Below are positions 41,133 through 63,255 of a stretch of DNA of 64,000 nt, one piece after another. Position numbers and translations under genes: made by a program. The first letter of the stretch is position 1; each line of letters starts with the position of its first letter. Location of the stretch: IMG/VR virus record IMGVR_UViG_3300008261_000001, positions 62,001-126,000 of that record; one strand, written 5' to 3'. The notes beneath the pieces are model-generated. The model was not told the origin of the DNA. It searched no databases and saw nothing but the letters and a program-made list of their open reading frames with translations.

Positions 41133-42278
41133 ATGAAGGTCACTATAGAGAACTTTCAGTCTATTGAACACACCGAGTTTGAGGTGAAGGGGCTTACGGT
41201 CATAACAGGTCCAAACAACACGGGTAAATCAGCGTGTGCAAGGGCTGTTATAGGGGCTTTCACCAACACAAGGGGGTCTAGCTTTGTCCGTCAAGGTACA
41301 AAGGGCTGTAGGGTTCAAATCGACTTCAAAGATGGGAAAAGCCTTGTTTGGGAAAAGGGGAAAAACACTAACCGATATGAGGTCGATGGCTTCGAGATCA
41401 ACAAGGTCGGCTCTGGAGTTCCAGACGAGGTCAAACAGCTTGGGGTTGTGGCTGTAGAGGTGGATGGAAAAGAAGTCTATCCACAAATTGCCAAGCAGTT
41501 TGAGCAGATTTTTCTTTTGGATATGCCACCGAGCGTTTTGTCTAGTGCTTTGTCCGATGTGGATAAAATCCAAGTGTTGGAGCAAGCTACTGCGATGGCA
41601 CGAAACGAGGTTAAGAGCATAAACAATAGGATAAAAGTCAAATCGGAGGACTTAGATCTAGAAAGGAAAAAAGTAAAAGCATTTGATGAACTGTACTTGG
41701 CACAACAAGCGAATCTTGTAGTCCAATCCTTACAAAACGAGTTATCCAATTTAGAACAAACAGTAAAGGTTTTAGGGGATATAATGGATAAAAGGTCTCA
41801 GTGTAAAAATATATTAAGTGTGTTGGGTGATGCTGTTCAAGTGTCTTTACCAGACACTAGAGCGGTTTATGATTTCGACAGGATACCAGAGCTTGAGCGG
41901 ATAAAGCGTGAGAGATCCAAGTGCTTACTATTGGATAAGTCTATATCTATTGGTTTGGATTCTTTACCGAGTCTTCCAGAGATTAAGGGCTTTGAGAAGA
42001 TAGAAAACCTAGAGCGTATTGTTGGTGTTCGTAATGGATATATTCAGTTATCGAGAGGTTTATCCAATATCCAAGAAATGAACATGAGTTTCAGTTCTGC
42101 CGAGGTGGAGCAGGTTATCCTATTTTTAGAGTACATGGAAAAGAGGAACGACTTAGCTTCAAAGTTAAAAGTTGCGGACTTGGAGGTAGAGCGTATATCG
42201 GATGAGTTAAGCTCACTGAAGACATCTTTAGGTGCTGTGTGTCCGCTCTGTGAGAAGGCGTGTGGGGATACACATTAA
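41133..42278 (+). CDS. N-terminal half of an SbcC/Rad50-like ABC ATPase ending at a zinc hook
   Basis: IENFQSI, ITGPNNTGKSA Walker A, Q-loop region, coiled coil and C-terminal CPLC. Confidence 0.85.
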   Translation: MKVTIENFQSIEHTEFEVKGLTVITGPNNTGKSACARAVIGAFTNTRGSSFVRQGTKGCRVQIDFKDGKSLVWEKGKNTNRYEVDGFEINKVGSGVPDEVKQLGVVAVEVDGKEVYPQIAKQFEQIFLLDMPPSVLSSALSDVDKIQVLEQATAMARNEVKSINNRIKVKSEDLDLERKKVKAFDELYLAQQANLVVQSLQNELSNLEQTVKVLGDIMDKRSQCKNILSVLGDAVQVSLPDTRAVYDFDRIPELERIKRERSKCLLLDKSISIGLDSLPSLPEIKGFEKIENLERIVGVRNGYIQLSRGLSNIQEMNMSFSSAEVEQVILFLEYMEKRNDLASKLKVADLEVERISDELSSLKTSLGAVCPLCEKACGDTH

Positions 42279-42802
42279 ACTTTGAGTGGGTTCCCATCAT
42301 CGTCAAACATACGCTCGATGTCGTAAGAACCGTCTTCGGCTAACTTAACCGACCATAGGTCTTTGGTCGCCTTATGGACTAATACGGCATCGTCGTTAGC
42401 GAACATAGAGTGAGCCATAAGGGAGGGACCACTAAGGATAACAAAGTGGTCGTCTATGGATGCGACCCTCTTAGAAACGACTTGTAAGAACTCTGAGGGG
42501 ATGCGGTCTATCTTCGCACCCCTACCATCGAACTTTACAAATACCTCTCCACCCATAGAGGTGACCTCGCCTGAGGCTGTCCTCACCGCCACAACCGTTC
42601 CCTTAGTGCCACTCATGGGAACTTGTGTGGGGATCACTACGCCATTGTTGGTGTAAACGGCTACCCGAGTTCCCTCTTTGAAGTTAATCCGTTTAGCTTT
42701 CCGACCTGTATCTGTAAGGTCAGAAATCTTGGTGTTCAACACCGCGTCCATGCTAGAGGTCTTGGCGTTCCCATAGAAGGTAATCTCGTCATCGTCCCAC
42801 AT
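42275..42802 (-). CDS. Hypothetical protein with an SH3/KOW-like core and RTAS/RVAS motifs
   Basis: FKEGTRVAV..GTKGTVVAV..VFVKFDG; preceded by an RBS-occluding hairpin. Confidence 0.7.
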   Translation of the reverse strand: MWDDDEITFYGNAKTSSMDAVLNTKISDLTDTGRKAKRINFKEGTRVAVYTNNGVVIPTQVPMSGTKGTVVAVRTASGEVTSMGGEVFVKFDGRGAKIDRIPSEFLQVVSKRVASIDDHFVILSGPSLMAHSMFANDDAVLVHKATKDLWSVKLAEDGSYDIERMFDDDGNPLKV

Positions 42803-42804
42803 GG

Positions 42805-42846
42805 TATCTCTCCTTATGTGTCATTCCATAAGGCTGAGATATAAAG
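42805..42846 (-). promoter_or_regulatory. CTTTATA motif plus RBS-occluding hairpin
   Basis: TATCTCTCCTTATG (42805-42818) pairs with CATAAGGCTGAGATA (42827-42841; one bulge/mismatch), covering AAGGAG 2-10 nt before the ATG. Confidence 0.6.
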
Positions 42847-42873
42847 GGTTTATTGAGAGACCCTTAAAGCACA

Positions 42874-42923
42874 AAGCCCCAGCCCCCTTTAGCCTTTGTG
42901 AGGGCGTTAAGGGGCTGGGGCTT
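42874..42923 (-). terminator. Probable intrinsic terminator after the SSB-like gene
   Basis: 13-bp inverted repeat AAGCCCCAGCCCC / GGGGCTGGGGCTT; on the minus strand it runs into TTTGTGCTTT. Confidence 0.6.
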
Positions 42924-42962
42924 GTTAGCCCTCTAGTGTTGGGGGGAGTCTAGGTGCGGTTT

Positions 42963-43694: not shown

Positions 43695-43828
43695 AGCAGT
43701 CACTCCTTGTATGAGGGTTAAGAGCGTTAGCAAGTCATTCGTATGATAGGCTCATCGCTCACCTAACCCTTATAAAATCTCACCCTCACTCTAAGGGTTT
43801 TTTTAAGTTTTTTCTGCCCCCCCCCAAA

Positions 43829-45043
43829 CTATCCATTATTCTCCTCTTTTACCTTAGCTTCATATTCAGCCTGAGCCTGAGCCGCCTCCGCTTCCCATCG
43901 TGCTCCCTCTTCTTGTCTCTTTCTAGCCTCTGCTTCCCAATCTTGTGCTCTGCTTTGTTGGTTCTTTTTACGCCTCTGCTCTTTCTCATACTCTTTCTGT
44001 AGCCTTTTAGCTTCACGCTCCGCCGCCTCTTGAGCTATTTGACGAGCTAGGGCTTCCTCCCTGGCTTTAGCTTCTTCTTCTTCCTTAAGCCTCTTCTGAT
44101 TATTCTCATGTAGGGCTTTATTTTGCTCATCACTAAGGATTTCTAGTGGGTCGCAGTTCACCTCGTCAGACTGACCATAAGGAACAATAGACTTAATAAA
44201 AATCCCCTCAAGTCGCCACTTATGCTCTTTGATTATCTCATTAACTATCCTTCTCCTTAGTTCCGCACTTTGGCTGTTTCTCTCTCTACCCCTAGCGAAG
44301 TTCTCTAATAAAGGTAGCTTCTTAATAGTTATGGTGTTCTCACTACCCTCTTCTTTTAGCTCAATGTCTTTATCCAAGTACTTCTTTAAGTCTGAGTCGT
44401 TCGTGTGGATGTTGGACTCCAAGATAATCAAAATCGTAAGCCCCCCATGCTCTATGGTTATTTTGTTGTAACTCTCTTGGCTAACACCGAAGTATCCTTT
44501 GGAAGTCCACAATGACTTCACTAAAGCCAGTTGCACACTATCTTCATCTTTGAAGAAACTTCCGATTGCCTTAACCACCGTGTCTTCTGAGATACTCCTA
44601 AGATCCATCCTCCATTGTGTATGCCTATTAAACTCCAAAGGTACGACACCTGCCCTACCAAACCTAAAGCTCTCCTCATAGGTTTTGTAAGCCGCATATT
44701 CAATATCTTCGTTATATATGGCTTTTATGCCGTCCTCAGTAATTATTGCTGGGCTGTTATTAAGGGAAGTCACGAGCTTGTTATAATCTTGCCTTTGCCT
44801 ATTCAACAGCCTGTCTAGATGGTCTGGGTGTACACGCATTGCTCGGCTAATCGCCACGCAAGGGCCACCGCTACCTAAGGGGGGGGTTAGGTCGGCTTGT
44901 CTCTCCAACATCGCCACTCTCTGCATAAGACGCTCTATTTGAGCGGCGAGCTTATCTGTAGAGGCAACCCTAGAAATCTTATTCTGAGCCACAAGGGAAG
45001 CTATCTTCCTTTGTGCTACGCGGACAATCATAAATCTATCCAT
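43829..45043 (-). CDS. Hypothetical protein with RVAS/KIAS-rich N-terminus, DUF4258-like segment and charged coiled-coil tail
   Basis: FNRHTQWRMDLRSISEDTV resembles the HAxxRMxxRxI pattern; E/K/R/Q-rich C-terminus. Confidence 0.7.
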   Translation of the reverse strand: MDRFMIVRVAQRKIASLVAQNKISRVASTDKLAAQIERLMQRVAMLERQADLTPPLGSGGPCVAISRAMRVHPDHLDRLLNRQRQDYNKLVTSLNNSPAIITEDGIKAIYNEDIEYAAYKTYEESFRFGRAGVVPLEFNRHTQWRMDLRSISEDTVVKAIGSFFKDEDSVQLALVKSLWTSKGYFGVSQESYNKITIEHGGLTILIILESNIHTNDSDLKKYLDKDIELKEEGSENTITIKKLPLLENFARGRERNSQSAELRRRIVNEIIKEHKWRLEGIFIKSIVPYGQSDEVNCDPLEILSDEQNKALHENNQKRLKEEEEAKAREEALARQIAQEAAEREAKRLQKEYEKEQRRKKNQQSRAQDWEAEARKRQEEGARWEAEAAQAQAEYEAKVKEENNG

Positions 45044-45050
45044 TTTCAGC

Positions 45051-45090
45051 TCCTTCTATGAGTTATCCTAAATGTAACCTCATAAAAGGA
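45051..45090 (-). promoter_or_regulatory. CTTTTATG motif plus RBS-occluding hairpin
   Basis: TCCTTCTATGAGTTA (45051-45065) pairs with TAACCTCATAAAAGGA (45075-45090; one bulge, one wobble), covering AAGGAG. Confidence 0.6.
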
Positions 45091-45129
45091 TAATACACCC
45101 CCCACCAAAGAGCTAGTATCCACCTCCCA

Positions 45130-50296: not shown

Positions 50297-53200
50297 GTGC
50301 TTCATATGCTTTTCCTAAGAAATAAAAACAGATCGGTGGTTCCCTTTAAGGGGGAGCTGTTCAAGATGATAGAGACGAAGTTCTCTAGGATTCCAGTCTT
50401 GAACGCTATGGGTCAGCAGATAGTGGATCCTTCCACCAAGAAGGTCAAGACGACAAAAGCTGAAGAAGTGACGATGCCCTTTTTCGTCTATAACTCTCTT
50501 GTGTCCTTAGACGAGTATGTCATGGGCAAAATGGAGCAACTAGAGGCGGATAAGGATAGGAAAAGGGTTAAGTCAGACTTAACGACTAAGTTCGCTGCGT
50601 CTTGGCGGTTTATACTTCGTAGGTGGACGGTGACCGCCCCCAAAGGCATGAGGGACAACTGCGTTAAGATCGAAAGATTTATCGAAGCACTCGACAACGA
50701 AATGGAAAACCTTATCAACGATAGGAATACCCCCTTCACAGAGAAGGTTAAAGCCATCAAAGATTATGCGAAGAGTACCGAGGGCAAAAAGCTCATGGAG
50801 CTTTACTGCGACTTCATGCGTAATGTGTTTCAGACCTTCGGCATGGTCGTGGCAGTATCCATTAAGGTCAATAACAGAGTCGGTGTAAGATATCTTCAGT
50901 TCAAGCTCGGCTCTCAAGTAGAGGCTATGCTTGAGGAAGCAAGCAACTCTGAAAAGGTTCGTATCGAACGAGCCATGAAGATGACCGAACTTCGTGATCT
51001 CAAGCTCAAAGCCCAAATGGATAACATGGGCTATGTTGTTGAGTCTATGCCCGTCTACGGAGATGGGGATAAACCCATCTTCGCCCTCGTAGCGTACGAC
51101 CCCGCATACAAGCAAATCCCCGTACCCAAAGTCCCCACAAGGGTAAAAGTAAGTGACGAGGAAAAGAAGCTCATTAAAGAGCTTTATCCCAACGAACAAG
51201 GGCTTTATTCAGTACTCCCCCCTAGAGCCACAAAGGAAGACAGGGATAGGCTTTTGGAAAGGATTGAGTTCCTTAAAGAAGAGATTAAGGATCAAATAGG
51301 AAAGTCACAAAAATTCTATCTCCCTGGTTATGGGATAAAACCTGATGGGACACCAGAGAAAACGGATAAAAACGGCAAGCCTATTTACAAGTACATAAAT
51401 ACAGAAACTGAACGCAGAAAAGCCGCTAGAGCCGCTAAAGCACTAGAAAAACTGCAATACAATATGAGCCTTCAGCTCTCTTCCAATGTAACCAAAGAAA
51501 TCAAAGATCAATACAGAAGGGCTATAGAGCCTTACATCAAGGGCATATACCACCCCAACTTCACCACAAACCTCGGCAACGAGTACGAGTACTTCCCCTC
51601 GCTACAAGCCTTAAAGGATAAAATAGCAGTACAACAAGCCTCTAGTACTGCTATTCAAACCGTACTCGTCCCTGAGTTCCAAACACAGAAGGTCAATGTG
51701 CCTAACTATCCTGTTTGGGATGATGTCACGCAGAAGATTAAGTATGAGTCCAAAGATCTCACTGTACCCGTGATAACAATCGGACCAAACAACACCGCAG
51801 TACCCCACTACGCAACAGAGCTTGCTAGTGTGAACTACGAAAAAGACGAAATCGTCACTAGAGAGATCAGGGACTTCGGTGAATCCCAAGTCGTAGGTAG
51901 TGGGATTTCTCGCTCTGTAGAGACAAAGCAGATAGTAGTAAACGGCTCACCAAAGTCTCTCATCGTAAAGGGTCGCTATGCAGGCTATCTCTTAGAACAC
52001 ATCGTTAACCTTGAGGGTAAGTTCATCGAGGGTGGGTACATCAACAAGGTTGGTGGAGATAACAAGACGGTCTCCCTCCTTGAAGACCGCATGATTGTTA
52101 AGGACGGAGTAGTACAGACCATAGACTACTTAGCGGACAATAAGGTACGCCAACGCTTAATCGAGCCTTATGTGACCCTCACAGAAGATGGGCAGTCGCT
52201 CTTGTTGGGTCTCCCTGGATCATCCCCTCGTGGGATAAATCTCGACCATAGCATAATGGATAAACTATCCAAAAAGGTAGCCACTATTGAGAAGGTGATC
52301 AATAAGGATATACCAGAGTCTCACTCATGGCATAGGTCTCGTAACCCTTACTACACCTTCAAGGTTGAAGACTTTGAGCTAGTTCGTAAGAGCCTCGGTT
52401 CTGTTGGTGTGAGCAAGCCAGCCTCCGACTTCATTGACGCTTATTTCAATAAGCTCAAAGCACAAGAGGCGGCGATGGCTGTAGAAAACCTAGAACGCTT
52501 CACCCCAGCGTCTCTAGGTGGCTTCGTTAAGCAAACGGATAGAGGCCCGTTTAGGTTCAACAATAAGCAACTCGAAGCCCTTGCTTGGATCGACTCCGCT
52601 GAAATGAAGGGTGTAGTCGGTCTAGACACAGGTGTAGGAAAGACGGTGACGGCTCTCGCCGCCATCAAGAACGCCATAAACCAAGAGATGTACGAGGGGC
52701 TACCTAAGCGTAAGTTCCTATTCGTATCGCCTGCTCGTCTTGTGGGCAACCTCAAGAAAGAGATAGATGCCTACATGGATGAGGGTGGTGAAGAAGTCAC
52801 TCTCGCTGACGGCACTAAGGATGTGTCTCCAAACTGGCGTAAGATACTCAACGACCGCGTGGTCGAGATGTCTTATGACAAGTACACGGAAACTTTCCAA
52901 GATTTCGGTGGGCAGTTCGCCTCCACAGAAGAGGGTTCTAAGCTACTGGAAGAGTTATCCGTTCTAGAGAGAGAAATACAGCTACAAGGTCGTCCCGTTG
53001 ACCCTAACAACCTAGAGGGCGAAAAGCACCCCACCCTAAGCGATAAGCAACTAGAGGCTAAGAAAAAGCTCATCAAAGAACTCAAGAAGCAAATCCGTCT
53101 GCTTCAAAAGGCACTCGTGGTGGAGAGTTATCCTAAAGCGGATAAGTATTTCCAAAAGGAGTTCTATGCCTGCTTCTTTGACGAGGTGAACGAAGCCCTT

Positions 53201-55882
53201 GTTGGGGATAAGAGGAAAGCCCTCGCCTCTCTCAAGCACCCTCGTAAGGTTTTCCTTACCGCCTCTACCATGCAGAAGGATCCCCTCGACCTTTACAGAT
53301 TCGTTACGCTCGCTAAGGGTGCAGATTACTCAGCGGCAGATGAAGAAGCCTTCGTTAAGAAATACGGAAATGTCGTGGGCGGTCGCTTTGTAGGCATCAA
53401 GAACGACCCTGAGGCTCAGAGAGAGTTCTACACATGGGTCAAGGAAAACGCTTTCTTTGCCTTTAAGGAGAGCGTCAACTATGAGGAGGTTGGCTTACCC
53501 AAGCTACTCCCCAAGACCTCACGCACCTTAACGGTTAAGATGCCACAGGCTGTTCAAAACGCCTATAAGCAAGAGGCTTCTAAAATCAAACGCGAACTCG
53601 CAGCCATGCTCAAGAAGTATCGTGACTTGAGTGCTGAAGAGCTTTCCTCATACAGCGACACCGAGGATGACGACTTCAGAGAGCTTAATCCCTCCGCTGT
53701 GGGTCGTGGCAGAAACCGCACCATGCAGAAGAAGCTACTCCAAGACTACGCTCAGAAGTCTCTTACACCGCTCATTAAGAAGCTCATGAAGCTATCCAAT
53801 AGACCTGAGAGCGTTATCAAGGGAGCTAAAAATGTAAAGGTGGAACAGGCTGTTGCTCTAGCCCTTGAGTACAGAACAACTAAGACCCTTTACTTCACCG
53901 CAGATAACCTCTTAGCTGTAGAGACAGGTAAGAGCATCAGTAAGAAGATGCCTGCAAAAGTCGTAGCTGTGTGCTTACCAGAAGCTATCCGCTTCTATCA
54001 AGCGGGCAAGCTCATCTACACCGTCAACTCAAGGGATAACCTCTCCCTTGAGCAGTTTGAAAAGCTAGATGTGGCTAAGATCATCAAGCGTTCAAACGAA
54101 ATGCCTGAGGGTGAAGAGATGGAGGCTGAGGCTACATGGGCAATGGATATCTCCAAGCAGTACATCAACAACAACCCCCACATCGGGTCTACCGTGTGTA
54201 CTGACGCTTATGCGTTCGGCTTTAACTTCCAAACCTTCACCAAAGTTATCCATTTGGATAGAGGTGCGGGATTCAACTCCGAAGTGATTAAGCAACGCAC
54301 AGCTAGAGCCTATAGAGCGGGACAAGACAAAGAGGTCGAAGAAATCTTCATCGACACCACAATGAGTGAAGCCACAGACTCACCCACCGCTGTGTCTCAG
54401 AATATCCAAGAGGGCGACATAGAGAACCTATCCATTGACGAGCTTCAGGGTCTAGTCGCCATGAAGGATCAAGAGTTCTTTACGGACATTATCCGTAAGA
54501 GCCTCACAATGGATTTAACCGCTGGTGCAGACGCAGTACAAAGAGACTCCTCTAAGGTGGTTAACTTCACCAACGAGATGCTCTCTTCTATTGTGGATCC
54601 TACGCCTCAGAACATCACCGCTCTTGAGGTACAGCTTGACGATTTTGAGAAGAATCCAGTAAATCATGTGTCTCTACCTGCGGATAGATATGCTCGGCTT
54701 AAAGGTAAATATAGTTTTGCTGTAGAGGGTTATCCACCTAAGAATTTAACTCTTATTCAAGCAATAAATACATTCACAAATGTGCCTGTAGAGCGTCTTT
54801 TCGACTCCATTGGGTTGTTCTTTAACAACTCAGACACAGAAAGCACTCAAAAAAGGATAAACATAGAAAAATATATGACTAAGGGATGGCAGATTTCCTA
54901 CCTAACACCCTTTGCCAGAACTACCGCTACAATAAAGTTTACTCAGGATACTGGTGAAGAGTATATTTATGGGGACTACACGGTGGCTGGAGAGTGTGCT
55001 CCAAGCGGTACTGGTATAAGGATAATGATTACCCGTGCCATATCCGCGATGAAGTCTGGTTTGAAGTCCGTGAGGAACACCTCTGCATTAACTGGTGGAC
55101 CGCGTGTGTGGCCGAAGGTTGGAATGAATGGTAAGGTCGATGTAGGTAGTATCGCAAACACTTGGAGATACAAGCATAACGGTTCTGCCGTTGCCGAACA
55201 GGAAGTAGAGTGGATGAAAGATCTTCTTGAAAGCGACAATAGCATCCTCAGGCTTATTGCTTCAGAGAGAAATCCTGGAGACAAGTTAGGTGAGCGTATG
55301 TGGTCTGCGGGAGCCCACGCTTTCAGCGGAAAAATAGACCTCACTCCAGGGAGTCTATCTCTACAGGTGCTGAACGGATACATTAAAAAGAAGTGTGAGC
55401 AGTTAGGCATAAGCGTACAAGATTACCTCACCGCACCACTAGAGCCTTTCGATCTCGAATCTGTGGATTGCTGGCGTAACCTAGCTAATGGGACTAAGTT
55501 CACTTATGAGGGGAAGGAAATAACCCTTGAGGAAGCAGCCTCGTTATTCCCCACAGAGTTCAAGATTGCCCTTAGGAGTAGTTCAATCCTTAGGGAAGTT
55601 TTGAAGTATTCCAAGCCAGAACTTTTGTCCAAGTATTTCCGCACACCTGTAGAACCCACGGTAGGGAGAACAGCCTCTCCTAGTCACAAGTACTCTTCTG
55701 AACAGCAAGAGGGTGTGGAAATGGATAGCATCCTTAAAGGCATGATGAATGACCCCATATTGGATAGTGTATGGGACGCTATTCGTAGGCAACACTCTAT
55801 CATCTCTATGGAGATAGACCTAGAGATAGACAGAGGCGACACCGACCTCTCACTCGTTGAGAAACTCAAAGGAGCTAACTGA
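50297..55882 (+). CDS. Large SNF2-like (SF2) ATPase with long accessory regions and a C-terminal GNAT-like segment
   Basis: LDTGVGKT (I), FFDEVN (II), LTAS (III), GFNFQ (V) and QRTARAYRAGQ (VI); the start may be ATG 50306 or 50366. Confidence 0.8.
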   Translation: MLHMLFLRNKNRSVVPFKGELFKMIETKFSRIPVLNAMGQQIVDPSTKKVKTTKAEEVTMPFFVYNSLVSLDEYVMGKMEQLEADKDRKRVKSDLTTKFAASWRFILRRWTVTAPKGMRDNCVKIERFIEALDNEMENLINDRNTPFTEKVKAIKDYAKSTEGKKLMELYCDFMRNVFQTFGMVVAVSIKVNNRVGVRYLQFKLGSQVEAMLEEASNSEKVRIERAMKMTELRDLKLKAQMDNMGYVVESMPVYGDGDKPIFALVAYDPAYKQIPVPKVPTRVKVSDEEKKLIKELYPNEQGLYSVLPPRATKEDRDRLLERIEFLKEEIKDQIGKSQKFYLPGYGIKPDGTPEKTDKNGKPIYKYINTETERRKAARAAKALEKLQYNMSLQLSSNVTKEIKDQYRRAIEPYIKGIYHPNFTTNLGNEYEYFPSLQALKDKIAVQQASSTAIQTVLVPEFQTQKVNVPNYPVWDDVTQKIKYESKDLTVPVITIGPNNTAVPHYATELASVNYEKDEIVTREIRDFGESQVVGSGISRSVETKQIVVNGSPKSLIVKGRYAGYLLEHIVNLEGKFIEGGYINKVGGDNKTVSLLEDRMIVKDGVVQTIDYLADNKVRQRLIEPYVTLTEDGQSLLLGLPGSSPRGINLDHSIMDKLSKKVATIEKVINKDIPESHSWHRSRNPYYTFKVEDFELVRKSLGSVGVSKPASDFIDAYFNKLKAQEAAMAVENLERFTPASLGGFVKQTDRGPFRFNNKQLEALAWIDSAEMKGVVGLDTGVGKTVTALAAIKNAINQEMYEGLPKRKFLFVSPARLVGNLKKEIDAYMDEGGEEVTLADGTKDVSPNWRKILNDRVVEMSYDKYTETFQDFGGQFASTEEGSKLLEELSVLEREIQLQGRPVDPNNLEGEKHPTLSDKQLEAKKKLIKELKKQIRLLQKALVVESYPKADKYFQKEFYACFFDEVNEALVGDKRKALASLKHPRKVFLTASTMQKDPLDLYRFVTLAKGADYSAADEEAFVKKYGNVVGGRFVGIKNDPEAQREFYTWVKENAFFAFKESVNYEEVGLPKLLPKTSRTLTVKMPQAVQNAYKQEASKIKRELAAMLKKYRDLSAEELSSYSDTEDDDFRELNPSAVGRGRNRTMQKKLLQDYAQKSLTPLIKKLMKLSNRPESVIKGAKNVKVEQAVALALEYRTTKTLYFTADNLLAVETGKSISKKMPAKVVAVCLPEAIRFYQAGKLIYTVNSRDNLSLEQFEKLDVAKIIKRSNEMPEGEEMEAEATWAMDISKQYINNNPHIGSTVCTDAYAFGFNFQTFTKVIHLDRGAGFNSEVIKQRTARAYRAGQDKEVEEIFIDTTMSEATDSPTAVSQNIQEGDIENLSIDELQGLVAMKDQEFFTDIIRKSLTMDLTAGADAVQRDSSKVVNFTNEMLSSIVDPTPQNITALEVQLDDFEKNPVNHVSLPADRYARLKGKYSFAVEGYPPKNLTLIQAINTFTNVPVERLFDSIGLFFNNSDTESTQKRINIEKYMTKGWQISYLTPFARTTATIKFTQDTGEEYIYGDYTVAGECAPSGTGIRIMITRAISAMKSGLKSVRNTSALTGGPRVWPKVGMNGKVDVGSIANTWRYKHNGSAVAEQEVEWMKDLLESDNSILRLIASERNPGDKLGERMWSAGAHAFSGKIDLTPGSLSLQVLNGYIKKKCEQLGISVQDYLTAPLEPFDLESVDCWRNLANGTKFTYEGKEITLEEAASLFPTEFKIALRSSSILREVLKYSKPELLSKYFRTPVEPTVGRTASPSHKYSSEQQEGVEMDSILKGMMNDPILDSVWDAIRRQHSIISMEIDLEIDRGDTDLSLVEKLKGAN

Positions 55883-57034: not shown

Positions 57035-57898
57035 CTACACACCCACCTCTTTAGCCGTTAAGTGTCCATTTTTGTACAGCCAATAAAGCTGAAGACCTAG
57101 CGTTGGAATAATCAGAGCGTTCCAACCTATCTGTAAAGACTTCATCACCCAACCTCCAGGGATACCAGGGAACATCAGCGTCACCAAGAACCCAAGCCCG
57201 CTCTCAGGTAATGACGCAAGCAACTCCCCCCATGAGATCATCCCTAGAAATCCCTTTAGGATATCCGTGATCTTCCAACTCACCTCCGTCACATTTATCC
57301 AGATTATCCAAAATATGTAGGCTTTAGCGGGAGTGGTTAAAGCGGACAATAAGGGGTTCGCCTCTAAGAACTTAGTCATCCAATCCGTCAGAGAGCGTGT
57401 GCCTTTGGTGAGCTTGCCCACATAAGCTGAAACAGCGGATCTCTTTTCCTCTGGTAGCTTCTTTATGAGGTCTGTCACTAAGGAGGTAAGCGTAGGGGCG
57501 TTGTTAGCGTAGGCAAAGAAAAACCTAACGAACGCATACTTGTCCTCTAAAGATTTCTTCTTTGAATCTATCCATTTTTTCCCCTCGTCCAAGAACTTCT
57601 CGAACTTGGTGGATAGCTCTTTGTAGAGGCTCAAAACATTCGTAGATGTGATGCCGAGCATCTCTTTGAACTGCTCCCACAGCTTAGGTGCTTTTTGGAA
57701 GCCTTGATAGATTTCTTTAATCTTTGAGACAAGCCCTTTGATACTCGCCCGCTTAACCGAACCTTTGAGGATTTGGTTTCCAAAGGGGATGAGGGTAATC
57801 TCGTTCAGTTCTTGGCGAACCAAATAAGCAGAGGCTGTACGAACTCTTGGGGATGTCCTTACAGCCTCTCTACAGGCAAAAGAGATTGTAGATCTCAT
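57035..57898 (-). CDS. Hypothetical protein with RTAS N-terminus and hydrophobic C-terminal helices
   Basis: YIFWIIWINV, LGFLVTLMFPG and WNALIIPTLGLQLYWLY hydrophobic stretches suggest membrane insertion. Confidence 0.7.
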   Translation of the reverse strand: MRSTISFACREAVRTSPRVRTASAYLVRQELNEITLIPFGNQILKGSVKRASIKGLVSKIKEIYQGFQKAPKLWEQFKEMLGITSTNVLSLYKELSTKFEKFLDEGKKWIDSKKKSLEDKYAFVRFFFAYANNAPTLTSLVTDLIKKLPEEKRSAVSAYVGKLTKGTRSLTDWMTKFLEANPLLSALTTPAKAYIFWIIWINVTEVSWKITDILKGFLGMISWGELLASLPESGLGFLVTLMFPGIPGGWVMKSLQIGWNALIIPTLGLQLYWLYKNGHLTAKEVGV

Positions 57899-58373: not shown

Positions 58374-58796
58374 TTATTTACGGATTTTTCTCATGCGAGC
58401 GTTGATCTTGTTGAACACCGCCTCTACATCCTCGATAGCCTCGATAGACTCTTCCAAAATGGATAACGCCTTACCCAAGTCACCGCCAGGTAAATCGAGG
58501 TGGTTCATGAGGTTGTTCTGAAGGATACGAGCCTCAGCCCTAAGGGGGTTAGCCTCGTCCTCGTCAAAAGAAACCTCCTCGTCTTCGTCCAACTGAGATT
58601 GAATAGAACCAACCTCTTTCAGTACAGCCTTAAACTCCGACTTAACGGACTCTACTGCCTTCTTTAGACCACCGAGGTCGAGCTTCACATCCTTATCATC
58701 TGCGGCGATACGGCTAGAGAAATCATTACGACCCTCTAGGCGGGCTAAACGGGACTCAAGTTCACGGACTACTTCACTTGCTAGACGAGTTCTCAT
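58374..58796 (-). CDS. Coiled-coil protein with an MRTRLASEV..RLARLE leader
   Basis: ATG 58796 after AAGGA (preferred over track start 58865). Confidence 0.7.
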   Translation of the reverse strand: MRTRLASEVVRELESRLARLEGRNDFSSRIAADDKDVKLDLGGLKKAVESVKSEFKAVLKEVGSIQSQLDEDEEVSFDEDEANPLRAEARILQNNLMNHLDLPGGDLGKALSILEESIEAIEDVEAVFNKINARMRKIRK

Positions 58797-58919
58797 AGCT
58801 GTCTTATCCTTTGTAAGTGGGGTGAAAAACACATGGGCAACAAAATATAAACGAATAAAAATCATCCCAACCCTGGTTATCCATTATTAGTGAGGAGAAC
58901 CAACAGCTAGGAGAGCTAA

Positions 58920-59207: not shown

Positions 59208-59822
59208 TCACTCAGAGTAAACGATCTCGCTCTCCACAGAGACTAAGAGAGACACCACTAGGGTATTCCTCTCTTTCTTAGCGGAGAGGTTCACCACCTC
59301 TAGTTCGGTCGTTATGTCTTGGATATCCAATCCACGAACCTCGTAGTTGAGTTCGAGCTTGGTGGCTTCTATGAGGTCTTGCTCTACGCTAGAGAGCTTA
59401 GACTTCACAACCGAGAACAAAGTTTTGGATAGATCTTCATAGCCCATGCCACCGAGTACTAGGGGTGTGCCTAGTACTCTTTCGAAATCACTTCCATCAT
59501 AGACATAGGTGAGAACCATCGAGCCACCTACTACCACTTGATCTGGATAAGGGATAAGCTCAGTCTCTCGTTCTGCTCTGTTGTATCGCTCGATAGAGGC
59601 GTAGCCCTTTTTGGCTTTAAAGTTCGAAGAACCATCTAGGTTAGAACCGAATCCTTGAAGGATTACATTTAGGACTTGATTAGCGACTTTATCGTCTCCC
59701 TCTGTTTGAGGGAAAACAGCATGGACAGGCTTTAGGTCTAAAGCCGCCCTACGAGTCATTCCGCTTTCGAGGCGGGCGACTCTCACCTCTAGACTTCTCA
59801 ATACTTCACTTGCTGTTCTCAT
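59208..59822 (-). CDS. Hypothetical protein with an MRTASEV..RVARLE leader
   Basis: 204 aa; leader shared with 58374-58796. Confidence 0.75.
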   Translation of the reverse strand: MRTASEVLRSLEVRVARLESGMTRRAALDLKPVHAVFPQTEGDDKVANQVLNVILQGFGSNLDGSSNFKAKKGYASIERYNRAERETELIPYPDQVVVGGSMVLTYVYDGSDFERVLGTPLVLGGMGYEDLSKTLFSVVKSKLSSVEQDLIEATKLELNYEVRGLDIQDITTELEVVNLSAKKERNTLVVSLLVSVESEIVYSE

Positions 59823-59871
59823 TTATAACCCCTTAGGTGAATCTTATTGTATCCACCTAAGGGGTTATAAA
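59822..59871 (-). promoter_or_regulatory. CTTTATAA motif plus a perfect 18-bp hairpin occluding the RBS
   Basis: TTTATAACCCCTTAGGTG (59822-59839) / CACCTAAGGGGTTATAAA (59854-59871); the stem ends at the A of ATG. Confidence 0.72.
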
Positions 59872-59883
59872 GAGACTATAAAC

Positions 59884-62800
59884 TCAGTTAGACCTAAGGA
59901 ACTCCCGCATAGCTTCCATAAAGCTAACGCTTGCAGTACGAGTATCGAGGGAGATCTCGGGTTGGATACAAGCCTCAGAGATGAAGGGGGAAGGACCGCC
60001 CTTACCCTTATTCCCACGGTCTGAGGGGTTTCTGTCAGGACCATAAAGAATCTTAACGCGGTCTTGCCCACGAGTGATAGCCACATAAGCAAGCCTACGC
60101 TCAGACTCTATATCAGAGCGAGGGTCTGGGAAGTATCCATTTGTCATAGGGAGGTACATATCCCTACACTCAAGACCTTTCCAAGCGTGCATGGTGCCGA
60201 GGAACACAGAGTTCTTATTTCGACCACCCTCTTCGTTGGACTTATCCGCCATCGTCTTCGACTGTTTCTTTAGCTCAAAGAAGAAGGTCAACCCATCTTC
60301 GAGGGTTCGTTTCTCGAACACACGATGGACTACGCGGGTTCCAGACTCAGCGTACTGAGCCATATCATCCAGAGTGACCTCGCCTGACTCGGTCTCTCTG
60401 GATAGATCGTCGATCTCGGCAGCGGACAAGTTTTCACCCGTGCGTTCCAAGAGGTTCTTACCATCTAGACCACGGATATTACGGCACACAAAGTCTATCA
60501 GTTCTGAGTTAGTCCCTTCGAAGTCCATAATAGACTTCAAAGCATCCGCATACGCCTTAGCATTGGACAATCTCTTGGTTTGGCTTGAAGGATAGAGCGA
60601 CCTCCAACCGCCATTCACCAAGAAATCTAAGGGGTGTTGCCCAGCGTGTCTTGCTTGCTCATCTAGGCTGGCATTGAACTGAGAGTCGATGTAAAACAAC
60701 AAGTGCTTGTGAGCCATCTTAACGGCTTCAAGTTTGTACACTGGATTGTTTGAACGAACCGACATCAAGTGAACAGGTGCAAGCATTGTGGCTGTGTTCA
60801 TTAAGTCTCTCTTACAGAAGTAAGGAACTCCAGCTACCAATAACTCAAACGCATATCCAGTCAGTTCTGCGTTTGTACGGCAACCAATACCGAACTTGTG
60901 TTGCTCACCATTTTGGTGAGACCAACCCTCAATCTCAATAATCTCAGAGATCTCCTTAGCCACCTCTACAGCACCAGGTGATTGGGGTGTCGATGTATTG
61001 ATGTGATCCTCTGAGGTAATCCGACCCTCTTCTTTTGTGGGTGTAGGATTACAAACCATAGGGATTTGTTTGGTGTTATGGGCGATGAGTTTATTAGCCG
61101 CTTGGACGATGTTGCGACCTGATCTAAAGTTTGTCCTTAAAACAGATGTCTTGAACTCACCATTGTAAGCGTCTGAGATGTTGATGAACTCCTCGGGTTG
61201 AGCACCTCTAAACTCGTAAATGGCTTGCTTGTCGTCACCAATGAAGCAGTATGTGTCTGCCGTCATACGACCATCACCATATGGCTGTAAGGTCTCGGGA
61301 TTAATATGACCTGCAATAAGACCGAACAGAGTGTGTTGTGCCTTATTTAAGTCTTGTGCCTCGTCTACGAAGATGTACTTGTAAGCCGCCTGCATGGAGC
61401 GGAGCTTAGACGGATTCTCTACAAGGGATTTATTCGCCCACACCAAAAGGTCGTCATAATCAGCGAGCTTCTCCCTTGTCTTAAAGTACATATAAGCACC
61501 ATAAACTGCCGCTACCGCTCCACCATTGCCCCCAGACCAAAGCTCGGTGGGTGACACCATATCCGCCATGTAGATACCGATCTCCTTCATGTAATCGGAT
61601 ACCTTCTGGTCTTTAGAGAGGACATCTTCCCTCTCGTAGCCAATGTTAAACCACTGCCCTACAGGCTCAGGTTTACCAAAGGGAGGGAAAGAGGCGAACT
61701 TACCCGTAAAGCCAGGAAATGGACCAGCCTTTTGGATAGAGTTCTGCCCACGATTTGTGGTGATGAGAGCATTAACTGTATCCCTAAAACCCCTATCGTC
61801 CCAAATGGGACTGCTCGGAGGTAAGAATGTGATGTTCCCTCTGTTGTCGATGTTTTGGATAGATGGACGAATCTTATCCAAATCACCTCTACCCCACGAC
61901 ATATTGTTATTTATAGCCCAAATCGCCTTCTCACCGATTACGCGGGCGGTCTCAATAAGAAGTCTCTTTAGCTCGTCCACTTGTTGTGTGTTTCCAGCCG
62001 CTTGATCCACTTGTACGCTCATAGACTGAAGTGGAGCGGCGGCGAGGGCGAGGTTAATGAAAGGTCTAACAAGTGGAGGGGTATTACTAGCAGGGTGATA
62101 AAGCATAACCTGCTCTATAGCCGCCTTCATCCACGCCTCTGCCTTAGACTCTGACATTAGCTCCACACCCCTAAGAAAACCAGAATCGGTACAAATCTTA
62201 TGGGAGATAGAGTGTGTCGTAGAGCCAATAAAACGACCAGAATCCGATGCTCCATTCGAGTACTTAGATGCCCTAGACTTCAACTCGTTAGAAGCCTCCT
62301 TGCCGAAGGTCGTGGCGATTATCTGATCAGGGCTGGCACCTAACTCGTTAATGGTGTAGGCGATCTTAGATGCCAACACACGAGTCTTACCAGAACCTGC
62401 ACCCGCAGCAATAATCGACTTACCCGTCACCATCATCGCTTCCTCTTGCTCTGGAGTGAGCCTTTGGATCTCTCCAGTTCGAGTTTGGAAACTTGTGTTG
62501 GTGTTGATTACACGACCCGCCTCTGCCAACAAAGCCTGCCTGTCTTCCGAACCTTTCGTCATATCCAAGAGCTTGTCGTACAAAACCTCGCGGTTTTGAA
62601 GCATCTTGATCTGCTCCCCTTCAGGCAAACCACCCGCCCTGATCCTCGCATCTAAGCTCTTAATCTCCCCCGCCAGCTTCGCTACCTCCCTTATGTCCCT
62701 AAGGCTTTGCTCCACAGGGTTCGCTTGCTCCAATAGAGCACACGCATCAGCTATCCATTTCCCTATCGACTGTGCCTTGCTCGCCCTCTCGACTAAGAGT

Positions 62801-63255
62801 AGACCGTTAAGATCCACCATAACATCAAGACAAGCATTGCTAACCCCAATCAAAGCTACTTGAGTCGGCTTATCTGTAAAAGCTGACTTCAAAAGAGGCT
62901 GACGAGTTTTAAACCAACCAAAAACACTCTTATAAACACGGCTTACAGCCACCACACGCTTTATCGTGACTTGTGGCGTCCCGACCAACCTAGATAAATA
63001 AGCCACTAAACGAGGCTTACTCTTTAAACCGTCAAACGCCTGCCCCTCAAGCAAACTTAAAATAGACTTCTCAGTTTCGAGAAACTCCTCTTTGAAACGC
63101 CTCAAGAGAGCCTCCGCATCTCCCATTAAAGCAGAAACATCGACACCGCTCTCTACAGAAAGCTCCTCAACAGCCCTAACAGCTAGAGAAAACTTGATTA
63201 AATCAGCTTGAAGCCTTGTCTCAGGCAAGGGTCCAGTAGCGGTCTTTACTCTCAT
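59884..63255 (-). CDS. UvrD/PcrA-like SF1A helicase with an N-terminal extension of about 260 aa
   Basis: LTPEQ, AAGAGSGKT, THS, VDEAQD, GDDKQAIYEFRGA, NFRS, RTNA, TMHAWKGLE and ERRLAYVAITR. Confidence 0.9.
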   Translation of the reverse strand: MRVKTATGPLPETRLQADLIKFSLAVRAVEELSVESGVDVSALMGDAEALLRRFKEEFLETEKSILSLLEGQAFDGLKSKPRLVAYLSRLVGTPQVTIKRVVAVSRVYKSVFGWFKTRQPLLKSAFTDKPTQVALIGVSNACLDVMVDLNGLLLVERASKAQSIGKWIADACALLEQANPVEQSLRDIREVAKLAGEIKSLDARIRAGGLPEGEQIKMLQNREVLYDKLLDMTKGSEDRQALLAEAGRVINTNTSFQTRTGEIQRLTPEQEEAMMVTGKSIIAAGAGSGKTRVLASKIAYTINELGASPDQIIATTFGKEASNELKSRASKYSNGASDSGRFIGSTTHSISHKICTDSGFLRGVELMSESKAEAWMKAAIEQVMLYHPASNTPPLVRPFINLALAAAPLQSMSVQVDQAAGNTQQVDELKRLLIETARVIGEKAIWAINNNMSWGRGDLDKIRPSIQNIDNRGNITFLPPSSPIWDDRGFRDTVNALITTNRGQNSIQKAGPFPGFTGKFASFPPFGKPEPVGQWFNIGYEREDVLSKDQKVSDYMKEIGIYMADMVSPTELWSGGNGGAVAAVYGAYMYFKTREKLADYDDLLVWANKSLVENPSKLRSMQAAYKYIFVDEAQDLNKAQHTLFGLIAGHINPETLQPYGDGRMTADTYCFIGDDKQAIYEFRGAQPEEFINISDAYNGEFKTSVLRTNFRSGRNIVQAANKLIAHNTKQIPMVCNPTPTKEEGRITSEDHINTSTPQSPGAVEVAKEISEIIEIEGWSHQNGEQHKFGIGCRTNAELTGYAFELLVAGVPYFCKRDLMNTATMLAPVHLMSVRSNNPVYKLEAVKMAHKHLLFYIDSQFNASLDEQARHAGQHPLDFLVNGGWRSLYPSSQTKRLSNAKAYADALKSIMDFEGTNSELIDFVCRNIRGLDGKNLLERTGENLSAAEIDDLSRETESGEVTLDDMAQYAESGTRVVHRVFEKRTLEDGLTFFFELKKQSKTMADKSNEEGGRNKNSVFLGTMHAWKGLECRDMYLPMTNGYFPDPRSDIESERRLAYVAITRGQDRVKILYGPDRNPSDRGNKGKGGPSPFISEACIQPEISLDTRTASVSFMEAMREFLRSN

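What the first reader, a model, noticed from the sequence alone, without database searches (positions are those of the whole stretch)
42275..63255. Recurrent K/R-x-A-S/T peptide near the termini of unrelated proteins: candidate prohead-protease or capsid-targeting signal
Seen: RTAS and RVAS (42275-42802); RVAQ, KIAS, RVAS and KLAA (43829-45043); RTAS about 60 aa from the C-terminus of the SNF2-like protein; RVRTAS (57035-57898); RLAS and RIAA (58374-58796); MRTAS and RRAA (59208-59822); KTAT at the N-terminus and RTAS about 15 aa from the C-terminus of the UvrD-like protein; KTAS in 1543-2472. Five of these genes also have the hairpin-type 5' region. I did not notice the motif at the termini of RecA, DnaX, SbcD or the MTase modules. 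Established: T4 gp21 and phiKZ gp175 cleave many head proteins at short motifs, removing propeptides. Inference: a basic-residue variant of such a code marks proteins that are packaged and ejected.
Basis: partly seen in the sequence, partly recalled or inferred. Interest (0 to 1): 0.76.

Follow-up and report, generated by a model that had tools for sequence, protein, structure and literature searches.

The report
Capsid-targeting leader and protease-site code
An uncultivated giant phage carries a short peptide code, basic residue-any-Ala-Ser, and a shared 20-residue N-terminal helix on many unrelated small proteins; this most likely marks proteins that are loaded into the phage head and cut by the head-maturation protease, so it could predict a phage's injected proteins from sequence alone.

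Summary
The real motif is narrower than proposed: [K/R]-x-A-S. Variants ending in T or A are not enriched.

- **Enrichment.** Of 8000 'a.bc' patterns, R.AS ranks first in this 290-kb phage genome (70 observed, 22 expected). It also ranks first in two of three related genomes, and only this order of the residues stands out.
- **Level of selection.** Codons vary, so selection acts on the protein.
- **Leader family.** The apparent terminal bias here comes mostly from a paralogous N-terminal leader, M-RTAS-EVLRSLEaRIARLE, often followed by a second site. It sits on 17 otherwise unrelated proteins, including 59208-59822 and 58374-58796. A profile of it finds 1107 protein clusters in public data.
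- **Head module.** Just beyond the window lie the portal, a gp21-like maturation protease, a scaffold-like protein and the major capsid protein. The most site-rich proteins are there: a 796-aa protein (10 sites), a 517-aa protein (7) and the protease (3).
- **Listed proteins.** The C-terminal site of the UvrD-like protein is kept in four of five genomes (KQSS in the fifth). The SNF2-like and 57035 sites are not conserved.

Best reading: a prohead-protease cleavage code plus a T4-CTS-like targeting leader. This is a new variant of a known kind. Cleavage and packaging are not shown.

The parts
59208..59822 (-). Gene for a 204-aa protein with the canonical N-terminal leader MRTASEVLRSLEVRVARLE (codons at about 59766-59822; RTAS at 59808-59819). 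The rest of the protein has no known relatives.
   Evidence: Leader HMM hit E 1e-12. No Pfam or PHROG hit. Site coordinates.
59823..59880 (-). 5' region of the leader gene: a TTTATA promoter-like box followed by a hairpin just upstream of the start codon. Other leader genes, and the 42275, 43829, 57035 and UvrD-like genes, have the same type of 5' region; in many of them GGAG lies in the 3' arm.
   Evidence: Upstream sequences read. Function not tested.
58374..58796 (-). Gene with a variant leader, MRTRLASEVVRELESRLARLEGR (RLAS at 58776-58787). The true start is probably the ATG at 58796, not the upstream ATG at 58865, because a TTTATA box precedes it.
   Evidence: Leader HMM hit E 1.6e-8. Upstream sequence.
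43829..45043 (-). 404-aa protein with a degenerate leader: KIAS (44996-45007), RVAS (44960-44971), then the helix QIERLMQRVAMLERQA.
   Evidence: Sequence. The G001 relative keeps only the helix, LRLRIARLERLA. The HMM hit is weak, E about 4.
59884..63255 (-). UvrD-like helicase (1123 aa). The C-terminal site RTAS (59929-59940) is followed by a 14-residue amphipathic tail, VSFMEAMREFLRSN.
   Evidence: Orthologue tails read RNAS, RNAS, KSAS and KQSS, 14-22 aa from the end, at about 31-56% identity. The G003 orthologue has 6 sites against 0.89 expected.
42275..42802 (-). 175-aa protein of unknown function. Site RVAS (42458-42469) is kept in all four genomes but slides by about 5 residues. RTAS (42572-42583) is not conserved.
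   Evidence: Alignment. 2 sites against 0.12 expected, P 0.007.
55667..55678 (+). RTAS, 68 aa from the C-terminus of the 1861-aa SNF2-like protein (50297-55882). Probably chance or lineage-specific.
   Evidence: The 47%-identical G001 and G002 orthologues read QRSLQS and RRSLQS. 2 sites against 1.19 expected.
57035..57898 (-). 287-aa protein with hydrophobic, membrane-like C-terminal segments. RTAS (57830-57841) and KRAS (57743-57754) are not conserved in orthologues.
   Evidence: Alignment.
1951..1962 (-). Internal KTAS in the 309-aa protein 1543-2472. Kept in G004, shifted in G003, KTAA in G001. Its status is unclear.
   Evidence: Alignment.

Best explanation
The window belongs to a 290-kb uncultivated jumbo phage. 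Its head-maturation protease is a distant relative of T4 gp21. I propose that this protease recognises the short linear motif [K/R]-x-A-S.

**Proposed sequence of events.**
1. About 17 small, mutually unrelated proteins begin with a conserved amphipathic helix, (M)-R-T/S-A-S-E-V-L-R-x-L-E-x-R-I/V-A-R-L-E. A first motif copy precedes the helix. A second copy or near-copy ([K/R]-Q/K/T-A/S-S) usually follows it.
2. The helix acts as a capsid-targeting propeptide. It docks the protein onto the prohead core, which is probably made of the 517-aa scaffold-like protein and the 796-aa repeat protein.
3. Once the shell closes, the protease cuts itself in its N-terminal arm and in the linker after its catalytic domain.
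4. It then chops the core proteins at their many sites and trims the leader from the cargo. The cargo stays in the head.
5. A few larger proteins, most clearly the UvrD-like helicase, carry the same site in front of a short C-terminal helix. They may be handled in the same way.

**Shown here.**
- The motif and the leader are real.
- Both are selected at protein level.
- The motif is conserved across the clade and concentrated in head-module proteins.

**Inferred only.**
- Cleavage itself and which bond is cut. A|S is a guess, by analogy with herpesvirus assemblin.
- Docking to the core.
- Presence in virions and ejection.
For: **The motif is specific.**
- R.AS ranks first of 8000 'a.bc' patterns in G000, G001 and G004. 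R.AS and K.AS rank fourth and fifth in G003. These genomes span 31-47% GC.
- Of 12 orderings of {[KR], x, A, S}, only B-x-A-S stands out: 120 against 36-58, 145 against 42-75, 127 against 39-85, and 114 against 29-67.
- Arg and Ser codons from both codon families are used.

**It sits in the head module.**
- The order is TerL, portal, two leader genes, a 1062-aa protein, protease (PHROG 18299, 5.5e-17), the 517-aa protein, a 201-aa protein, capsid protein (PHROG 2522, 2.7e-51), then two more leader genes.
- The site-richest proteins are the 796-aa protein (10 sites, P 4e-9), the 517-aa protein (7, P 8e-6) and the protease (3).
- Their orthologues are again the richest in G001, G003 and G004.

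**Individual sites are conserved while x and K/R vary.**
- Site 137 of the 517-aa protein is kept in 21 of 21 relatives, as RTAS, RRAS, RNAS, KFAS, KKAS or KTAS.
- Protease site R-V/I-A-S25 is kept in 30 of 33 relatives, within poorly conserved flanks.
- The linker after the catalytic domain always holds a K-x-A-S. This is also true of Bacillus phage G gp19.
- Protease sites 25 and 270 fall in segments modelled as disordered. Site 380 falls between two helices.

**The leader is widespread and modular.**
- It gives 17 hits in G000, 29 in G001 and 16 in G003, with variants in G004.
- It gives 62 hits in 30 related loci.
- A profile finds 1107 clusters among 1.84 billion representative proteins. 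The leader is at residue 1 in nearly all of the top 150. Their cargo parts fall into 115 unrelated groups out of 140.
- One copy sits at a C-terminus.

**The protease family fits.**
- It has tblastn relatives annotated as prohead proteases.
- T4 gp21 is the top Foldseek hit, though weakly.
- His131 and Ser182 are invariant.

**Published precedent.**
- T4 capsid-targeting sequences and gp21 processing (PMC9026906).
- The SPN3US A-x-E code and its propeptides (PMC10052503).
- The N-terminal packaging signal of P1 DarB (PMC9024508).
Against: - There are no proteomic or biochemical data, so cleavage, packaging and ejection are all inferred.
- The first motif copy lies 1-2 residues from the initiator Met. 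Cutting there would achieve little, so that copy may be a binding element.
- The second site is a strict [KR]xAS in only 36 of 147 top leader proteins. It is relaxed in 70 and absent in 41. In G003 the leader flanks read KVSAQQ and KEAG.
- Strict positional conservation of sites is barely above permuted controls: 26% against 20%. Within 8 residues either way it is 32% against 21%.
- The major capsid protein has no site.
- The protease model is poor (pLDDT 54) and its match to gp21 is not significant. Pfam Peptidase_S77 does not match the genome.
- Known gp21-type proteases cut after Glu. A basic-x-Ala-Ser code has no precedent that I found.
- Outside the leader family and the head-core proteins, roughly two thirds of the sites are expected by chance. 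Single sites therefore cannot be called.
Confidence: 0.55

Rival explanations
1. The leader helix is a permanent docking or anchor module, for example a coiled-coil adaptor. It would fix many alternative small proteins to one site on the virion or on another phage complex. [KR]-x-A-S would then be a structural or binding element, such as a helix N-cap with Ser, rather than a cleavage site.
For: - The motif often directly precedes a helix: the leader, the UvrD tail, and the modules of the 796-aa protein.
- The first copy is too close to the N-terminus for cutting there to matter.
- The second site is often imperfect.
- The helix core LE-x-R-I-A-R-L-E is better conserved than its flanks in G003.
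Against: - This does not explain 7-10 sites in the scaffold-like and repeat proteins next to the protease.
- It does not explain the conserved sites in the protease's own disordered linkers.
- R.AS is not enriched in Tunturi_5 (37 against 33) or phage G (14 against 15). It is therefore not a general helix-capping preference.
Confidence: 0.15
2. The motif is the target of a different protease or quality-control system, phage-encoded or from the host. The head-maturation protease would not be involved.
For: Sites also occur in proteins outside the head module, at about twice expectation in internal regions. The specificity of the head protease is unknown.
Against: - The strongest concentration is in proteins encoded beside the head protease, and in that protease itself.
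- The same pattern recurs beside the homologous protease in Tunturi_5, in gp328, gp332 and the protease termini.
Confidence: 0.1
3. [KR]-x-A-S is a serine modification site, for example phosphorylation by a basophilic R-x-x-S kinase or another Ser/Arg modification. The modification would regulate head assembly proteins.
For: R at -3 of Ser fits the basophilic kinase consensus. RRAS-L resembles the classical kemptide substrate (my own knowledge).
Against: - The genome gives no Pkinase (PF00069) match at E up to 1.
- Ala at -1 is strictly required and Thr is not accepted: R.AT and K.AT are flat.
- Many sites clustered in scaffold-like proteins is the pattern expected of scaffold removal by proteolysis.
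Confidence: 0.07
4. The recurrence is an artefact of composition, paralogy or a DNA-level motif, with no function for the tetrapeptide itself.
For: About a quarter of the sites (27 of 120) lie in the paralogous leader genes. Strict positional conservation is weak.
Against: - The permutation control argues against a composition effect.
- The enrichment holds across 31-47% GC.
- Codons are diverse.
- x and K/R vary at conserved sites.
- The enrichment persists without the leader genes: 54 against 28 internally.
Confidence: 0.03

Closest known systems
T4 capsid-targeting sequences on internal proteins IPI-III and Alt, processed by the prohead protease gp21 (PMC9026906)
   Same: - A short N-terminal propeptide is shared by otherwise unrelated small proteins.
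- The genes lie with the head genes.
- The propeptide is bounded by the motif that also riddles the scaffold or core proteins and the protease itself.
- The cargo is hypervariable.
   Different: - There is no sequence similarity to the T4 sequence.
- The leader here is longer, about 20-25 residues, and is an amphipathic heptad helix.
- The candidate code is basic-x-Ala-Ser, not L/I-x-Glu.
- Each genome has 17-29 tagged genes, against about 4 in T4.
- Nothing has been tested experimentally.
phiKZ gp175 and SPN3US gp245 prohead proteases, with the S/A/G-x-E (A-x-E) code and their ejection proteins (PMC10052503, PMC5694885)
   Same: - It is a jumbo-phage head with many processed proteins.
- The protease cuts itself after its catalytic domain.
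- Several motif copies occur in the regions that are removed.
- The protease is a distant sequence relative: tblastn hits include Erwinia and Dickeya jumbo-phage proteases.
   Different: - A.E, S.E and G.E are not enriched here (z -3.2 to +1.3).
- The major capsid protein is short (292 aa) and has no site or long propeptide.
- The phage belongs to a different lineage: its capsid protein resembles those of phage G, Tunturi_5 and cluster-C mycobacteriophages.
Herpesvirus assemblin, with its release and maturation sites cut at Ala|Ser (my own knowledge; cited as the fold relative of gp21 in PMC9026906)
   Same: - Ala-Ser lies at the core of the site.
- The protease carries a C-terminal scaffold-like extension, with a site in the linker between the catalytic and C-terminal parts.
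   Different: - In assemblin sites the residue two positions before the Ala is hydrophobic, not basic.
- The scissile bond here is unknown.
- Homology is supported only weakly.
Phage P1 DarB, an N-terminal packaging signal on a 250-kDa helicase/methyltransferase (PMC9024508); and 'polyvalent proteins' predicted to be packaged (PMC5512222)
   Same: This is precedent for large nucleic-acid enzymes being loaded into heads by a short terminal signal and delivered to the host.
   Different: - The candidate signal on the UvrD-like protein is C-terminal.
- The giant ORFs in this window (8749-16725 and 16812-23954) are not enriched in sites.
- There is no sequence similarity.
Encapsulin cargo-loading peptides (my own knowledge)
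   Same: A short terminal peptide directs diverse cargo into a shell built from the HK97 fold.
   Different: - Those peptides are usually C-terminal and are not removed by a protease.
- The sequence is unrelated.
- The system is cellular, not viral.

Membership tests
T4-type capsid-targeting sequence / internal-protein system | One short N-terminal peptide shared by otherwise unrelated small proteins | tested here: met
   17 leader hits in G000, 29 in G001 and 16 in G003. 1107 clusters in public proteins; the cargo parts of 140 fall into 115 unrelated groups.
T4-type capsid-targeting sequence / internal-protein system | The peptide ends at the cleavage motif of the prohead protease | tested here: inconclusive
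   After the helix there is a strict [KR]xAS in 36 of 147, a relaxed form in 70 and none in 41. The protease's specificity is itself only inferred.
T4-type capsid-targeting sequence / internal-protein system | Tagged proteins are incorporated into the prohead and the tag is removed | not testable with these tools
   This needs virion or prohead proteomics, or reporter fusions.
T4-type capsid-targeting sequence / internal-protein system | Sequence homology to the T4 capsid-targeting sequence | not tested
   No sequence comparison was run. From memory, the consensus M-R-R-S/T-A-S-E-V-I-R-x-L-E-x-R-I-A-R-L-E does not resemble the T4 sequence. This would be an analogue, not a member.
gp21 / assemblin-like prohead serine proteases | Sequence or profile membership | tested here: inconclusive
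   PHROG 18299 'head maturation protease' at 5.5e-17, and tblastn relatives annotated as prohead proteases. But Pfam Peptidase_S77 gives no match in the genome, Pfam gives no protease hit, and there is no PDB sequence hit.
gp21 / assemblin-like prohead serine proteases | The fold | tested here: inconclusive
   The AlphaFold model has mean pLDDT 54. The Foldseek top three hits are T4 gp21 (5jbl), but at E 0.017-0.03 and probability 0.33.
gp21 / assemblin-like prohead serine proteases | Conserved catalytic His and Ser | tested here: met
   H131 and S182 are invariant in 17 relatives and in phage G gp19. Calling them catalytic is inference.
gp21 / assemblin-like prohead serine proteases | Gene lies between the portal and major capsid genes, next to a scaffold-like gene | tested here: met
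   Gene order. The order is the same in phage G and Tunturi_5.
Acidic-P1 cleavage codes (T4 L/I-x-E; phiKZ/SPN3US S/A/G-x-E) | The motif ends in Glu and is concentrated in head-core proteins | tested here: not met
   A.E, S.E and G.E are not enriched. In the four head-core proteins the top 'a.b' patterns are K.A and R.A.

The most novel reading that the evidence does not exclude
The leader helix together with [K/R]-x-A-S is a readable 'packaging code' for a large, globally distributed clade of uncultivated jumbo phages. If so, it lets one list each phage's head-loaded, host-injected proteins from sequence alone. That list would cover more than 1100 distinct cargo families, nearly all of unknown function and likely rich in anti-defence or takeover factors. 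It would also include DNA-repair-type enzymes such as the UvrD-like helicase. The code would rest on a prohead-protease specificity (basic residue, any residue, Ala, Ser) unlike the Glu-dependent codes known from T4 and phiKZ.
Probability: 0.4. Interest if true: 0.8.

Novelty: new variant of a known kind. Interest (0 to 1): 0.7.

Why it matters
**A sequence tag for injected proteins.** Proteins carried inside phage heads and injected with the DNA are the first phage factors the host meets. They include known anti-restriction proteins such as T4 IPI and P1 Dar. For uncultivated phages there is at present no way to tell which genes encode such proteins. A validated sequence tag would make that prediction possible for a clade found in hundreds of metagenomes: 573 capsid-gene relatives in IMG/VR and 1107 tagged protein clusters.

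**A third cleavage code.** It would add a third, chemically different cleavage code to the two known for gp21-type proteases.

**A tool for loading proteins.** It would provide a candidate peptide for loading foreign proteins into large capsids.

**It can be tested now.** The weaker K-x-A-S/A pattern in the cultured relatives Tunturi_5 and Bacillus phage G means the idea can be tested with existing phage stocks.

Tried and rejected
**Searches that gave nothing.**
- Near-identical DNA in the INPHARED phage collection: none.
- PHROGs and Pfam on the window ORFs and on 10 leader proteins: no hits.
- ESM Atlas on the 796-aa protein: no usable relatives and a poorly ordered model.
- PDB sequence searches with the protease and with its profile: nothing relevant.

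**Ideas tested and dropped.**
- A DNA-level explanation of RTAS: rejected, because Arg and Ser codons vary.
- T/A variants of the motif: rejected, because they are not enriched.
- A composition artefact: rejected by the permutation control and by the GC range.
- A kinase-site reading: weakened, because no Pkinase match was found.

**Tests that gave weak or mixed results.**
- Terminal enrichment in this genome after removing the leader genes: not significant.
- Strict positional conservation of sites: only marginally above controls.
- A leader-like family in the first 50 kb of phage G: none found. N-terminal K.AS cases in phage G share no helix.
- The capsid protein N-terminus (K-L-A-A/S-S) as a processing site: left open, because it is not a strict motif in this genome.

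- The third ran, on clade sequences only.
Full report
**Context**

The window is bases 62001-126000 of a single 290,179-bp IMG/VR virus record, estimated 93% complete. It has no near relative among sequenced phages. Its major capsid protein has 573 relatives in IMG/VR. The 80 best share 91-100% protein identity, although neighbouring genes share only 35-60%. More distant cultured relatives are Tunturiibacter phage Tunturi_5 (47%), Bacillus phage G (39%) and cluster-C mycobacteriophages (about 27%).

I called genes with a simple longest-ORF procedure: 331 ORFs and 90,866 aa. N-terminal positions therefore depend on my choice of start codon.

In the region 42275-63255, [KR].AS occurs 13 times against 4.4 expected and RTAS 5 times against 0.09.

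Genome-wide counts against 300 within-protein shuffles:

| Pattern | Observed | Expected |
|---|---|---|
| R.AS | 70 | 22 |
| K.AS | 50 | 26 |
| RTAS | 19 | 1.5 |
| R.AT | 23 | 17 |
| K.AT | 17 | 20 |
| [KR].AA | 23 | 43 |

The control patterns ([DE].A[ST], [KR].GS, [KR].SS and the reversed motif) are flat. The motif is therefore [K/R]-x-A-S, not K/R-x-A-S/T/A.

- An unbiased scan of all 8000 'a.bc' patterns puts R.AS first in this genome.
- It is also first in the related complete genomes G001 (376 kb) and G004 (316 kb).
- In G003 (312 kb), R.AS and K.AS rank fourth and fifth. These genomes span 31-47% GC.
- Among the 12 possible orders of the same residues, only B-x-A-S stands out in all four genomes.
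- The RTAS codons use both Arg families and both Ser families. Selection therefore acts on the protein.
- R.AS is not enriched in Tunturi_5 (37 against 33) or phage G (14 against 15), so it is not a general property of phage proteins.

**Where the terminal bias comes from**

Eleven of the 19 RTAS copies belong to one N-terminal module, M-RTAS-EVLRSLE-a-RIARLE.

- A small HMM of this module finds 17 copies in the genome. They include 59208-59822 and, in variant form, 58374-58796.
- 43829-45043 carries a degenerate copy.
- Usually a second [KR]xAS or near-copy follows the helix directly, for example ...ARLEG-RTAS-SK-RSAS.
- One copy sits at a C-terminus (RSAS-DVLRSLETRIARLEARRR, then stop).
- With the 16 leader genes I called removed, the motif is about twofold enriched equally in the N-terminal, internal and C-terminal zones.
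- The 30-residue end zones are then not significantly above the internal rate in this genome.
- Pooling four genomes does show an excess within 30 residues of both ends. That pool counts orthologues more than once. It also includes variant leaders (G004: MISQ-KLAS-LEARIAKLE...KKAS) and a family of C-terminal 'site plus helix' tails in G003.

**What surrounds it**

Just 3' of the window lies the head module (window-extended coordinates):

| Coordinates | Product |
|---|---|
| 83910-85766 | Terminase large subunit |
| 86055-87740 | Portal |
| 87811, 88466 | Two leader genes |
| 89666-92854 | 1062-aa protein |
| 92859-94244 | Head-maturation protease (PHROG 18299, 5.5e-17) |
| 94204-95757 | 517-aa protein |
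| 95904-96509 | 201-aa protein |
| 96531-97409 | 292-aa major capsid protein (PHROG 2522, 2.7e-51) |
| 97593, 98291 | Two more leader genes |

- The proteins with the greatest excess of sites are a 796-aa protein at 80108-82498 (10 sites, P 4e-9), the 517-aa protein (7 sites, P 8e-6), the leader proteins and the protease itself (3 sites).
- In G001, G003 and G004 the orthologue of the 796-aa protein is again the richest (9 sites each). The 517-aa orthologue ranks second in G003 and G004 and eighth in G001 (4-9 sites). The protease and UvrD-like orthologues also rank high.
- The 796-aa protein is built of repeated helical modules with a site at most junctions. Several of these are positionally conserved. 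Its Atlas model is poorly ordered.

**Conservation of single sites**

- Site 137 of the 517-aa protein is a motif in 21 of 21 relatives, while x and K/R vary freely (RTAS, RRAS, RNAS, KFAS, KKAS, KTAS). Site 471 is kept in 19 of 21.
- The protease has R-V/I-A-S-G at residue 25 in 30 of 33 relatives, within a poorly conserved arm.
- The protease always has a K-x-A-S in the linker after its catalytic domain. In phage G gp19 that linker reads KVAS and KIAS.
- In the (poor) protein model, sites 25 and 270 lie in disordered segments. Site 380 lies between two helices of a confident C-terminal helical domain.
- Over all non-leader proteins, strict positional conservation is only 26% against 20% for permuted controls.
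- Within 8 residues either way it is 32% against 21%. Sites therefore turn over, while the same proteins stay site-rich.

| Protein | Result |
|---|---|
| UvrD-like helicase | The C-terminal site is RTAS, RNAS, RNAS, KSAS or KQSS in five genomes, at about 31-56% identity. It is always 14-22 residues from the end and is followed by a short amphipathic tail. The G003 orthologue has 6 sites against 0.89 expected. A credible substrate. |
| 42275-42802 | The site near residue 112 is kept in four genomes but slides by five residues. RTAS74 is not kept. |
| SNF2-like | The orthologues read QRSLQS and RRSLQS. Not supported. |
| 57035-57898 | Neither site is conserved. |
| 1543-2472 | Ambiguous. |
| UvrD N-terminal KTAT | Belongs to a class that is not enriched. 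|

**The leader beyond this genome**

- It gives 29 hits in G001 and 16 in G003. In G003 the helix core is best kept and the flanks are altered.
- It gives 62 hits in 30 related loci. The downstream sequences I read differ from one another.
- A 38-sequence profile finds 1107 representative proteins among 1.84 billion (E up to 0.001). The leader is at residues 1 to about 30 in nearly all of the best 150, which are 40-400 aa long.
- The cargo parts of 140 of these fall into 115 groups with no BLAST similarity.
- Ten leader proteins from this genome have no Pfam family.
- Leader genes share a TTTATA box and a hairpin, in many of them with the GGAG ribosome-binding site in its 3' arm. The UvrD-like, 42275, 43829 and 57035 genes have the same kind of 5' region. 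I did not test its function.

**The protease**

- Its relatives by tblastn include proteins annotated as prohead proteases in actinophages and in Erwinia and Dickeya jumbo phages.
- His131 and Ser182 are invariant, and a Cys/His-rich insertion is conserved.
- The model is poor (pLDDT 54). Its best three Foldseek matches are T4 gp21, at non-significant scores.
- Pfam Peptidase_S77 does not match.
- The Glu-dependent codes of T4 and of phiKZ/SPN3US are not enriched. In the four head-core proteins the top two-residue patterns are K.A and R.A.

**Wider relatives**

- In Tunturi_5 the top-ranked pattern is K.AA (90 against 41), and K.AS is mildly enriched (z 4.0).
- The richest Tunturi_5 proteins again flank the protease. 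They are gp328, annotated as a DNA ejection protein (10 sites), and gp332. The protease termini also carry sites.
- In phage G, K.AS is mildly enriched (z 3.7) and lies in gp4, gp7, the portal and the protease.
- The published phage G multi-omics paper does not mention a cleavage motif.
- My literature searches found no description of a basic-x-Ala-Ser code. The library is incomplete.

**Interpretation**

The pattern parallels T4, as described in PMC9026906:
- the scaffold and core proteins and the protease are riddled with the protease's motif;
- small internal proteins share an N-terminal targeting propeptide that ends at that motif;
- the genes lie with the head genes.

I therefore read [K/R]-x-A-S as the recognition code of this clade's head-maturation protease. 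I read the leader helix as a capsid-targeting propeptide. The steps from 'selected motif in head-module proteins' to 'cleaved, packaged, ejected' are inference.

The rivals are a permanent docking helix, another protease, a serine modification site and an artefact. They are weighed in their own sections of this report.

**Verdict**

In this genome its terminal bias is due mainly to one leader family.
- This is a new variant of a known kind of system, in an abundant uncultivated clade. It can be tested in two cultured relatives.

Noticed in passing
whole genome; 55 copies in the window, the first near 408, 1353, 1449, 5348, 6266 and 9938: The DNA octamer TATCCAAT/ATTGGATA occurs 258 times in this genome against about 11 expected. 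It is equally frequent on both strands, with a median spacing of 648 bp. Most copies lie inside genes in one reading frame (TTA-TCC-AAT = Leu-Ser-Asn), which makes the tripeptide LSN threefold enriched. It is not over-represented in the related genomes G001, G003 or G004, nor in Tunturi_5 or phage G.
   Followed up: partly
upstream of window genes ending at 59822, 63255, 57898, 42802 and 45043, and of the leader genes elsewhere in the genome: These genes share a 5' region: a TTTATA box followed by a hairpin. In many of them the GGAG ribosome-binding site lies in the 3' arm. In several leader genes the whole 5' region of about 60 nt is nearly identical.
   Followed up: partly
L006:14859-16244 (the protease, just outside the window): The head-maturation protease carries a conserved Cys/His-rich, zinc-ribbon-like insertion (C192, C195, C206, H208, C231, H233). 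It also has a 190-residue C-terminal extension that ends in a well-modelled helical domain. The extension is absent from phage G gp19.
   Followed up: no
L006:2108-4498 (the 796-aa protein, outside the window): The protein is made of repeated helical modules of about 50 residues, separated by [KR]xAS sites. It has a conserved N-terminal region, a Cys cluster (KCASCVF...CQKYNK) and the C-terminus FGGFEV. It has no database relatives outside the clade and a poorly ordered predicted structure.
   Followed up: partly
G003 (L111-L126) and G004 (L127-L142): The relatives use variant tags.
- G004 leaders read MISQ-KLAS-LEARIAKLE...KKAS. A second N-terminal family there has tandem sites (MYSQRQRQS-RLAS-LRQN-RLAS-LRS-KKAS).
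- G003 has a paralogous family that carries both the N-terminal leader and a C-terminal 'site plus short helix' tail.
   Followed up: partly
P0010 (public protein): One metagenomic protein carries two complete leaders in tandem, joined site to site (…RIARLERKAS-KRTASEKLNDIDRRIARLERKAS…).
   Followed up: no
L006:18531-19409 (capsid protein), with G004 and Tunturi_5 for comparison: The N-terminal arm of the major capsid protein keeps K-L-A-A/S-S near residue 27-30 in G000 (KLAAS), G004 (KLASS) and Tunturi_5 (KLAAS). This is close to the motif, but not a strict copy in this genome.
   Followed up: no
window 8749-16725 and 16812-23954 (minus strand): Two giant ORFs (2658 and 2380 aa) resemble the 'polyvalent proteins' predicted to be packaged into phage heads (PMC5512222). 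Their [KR]xAS counts are not enriched (2 and 0 sites).
   Followed up: no
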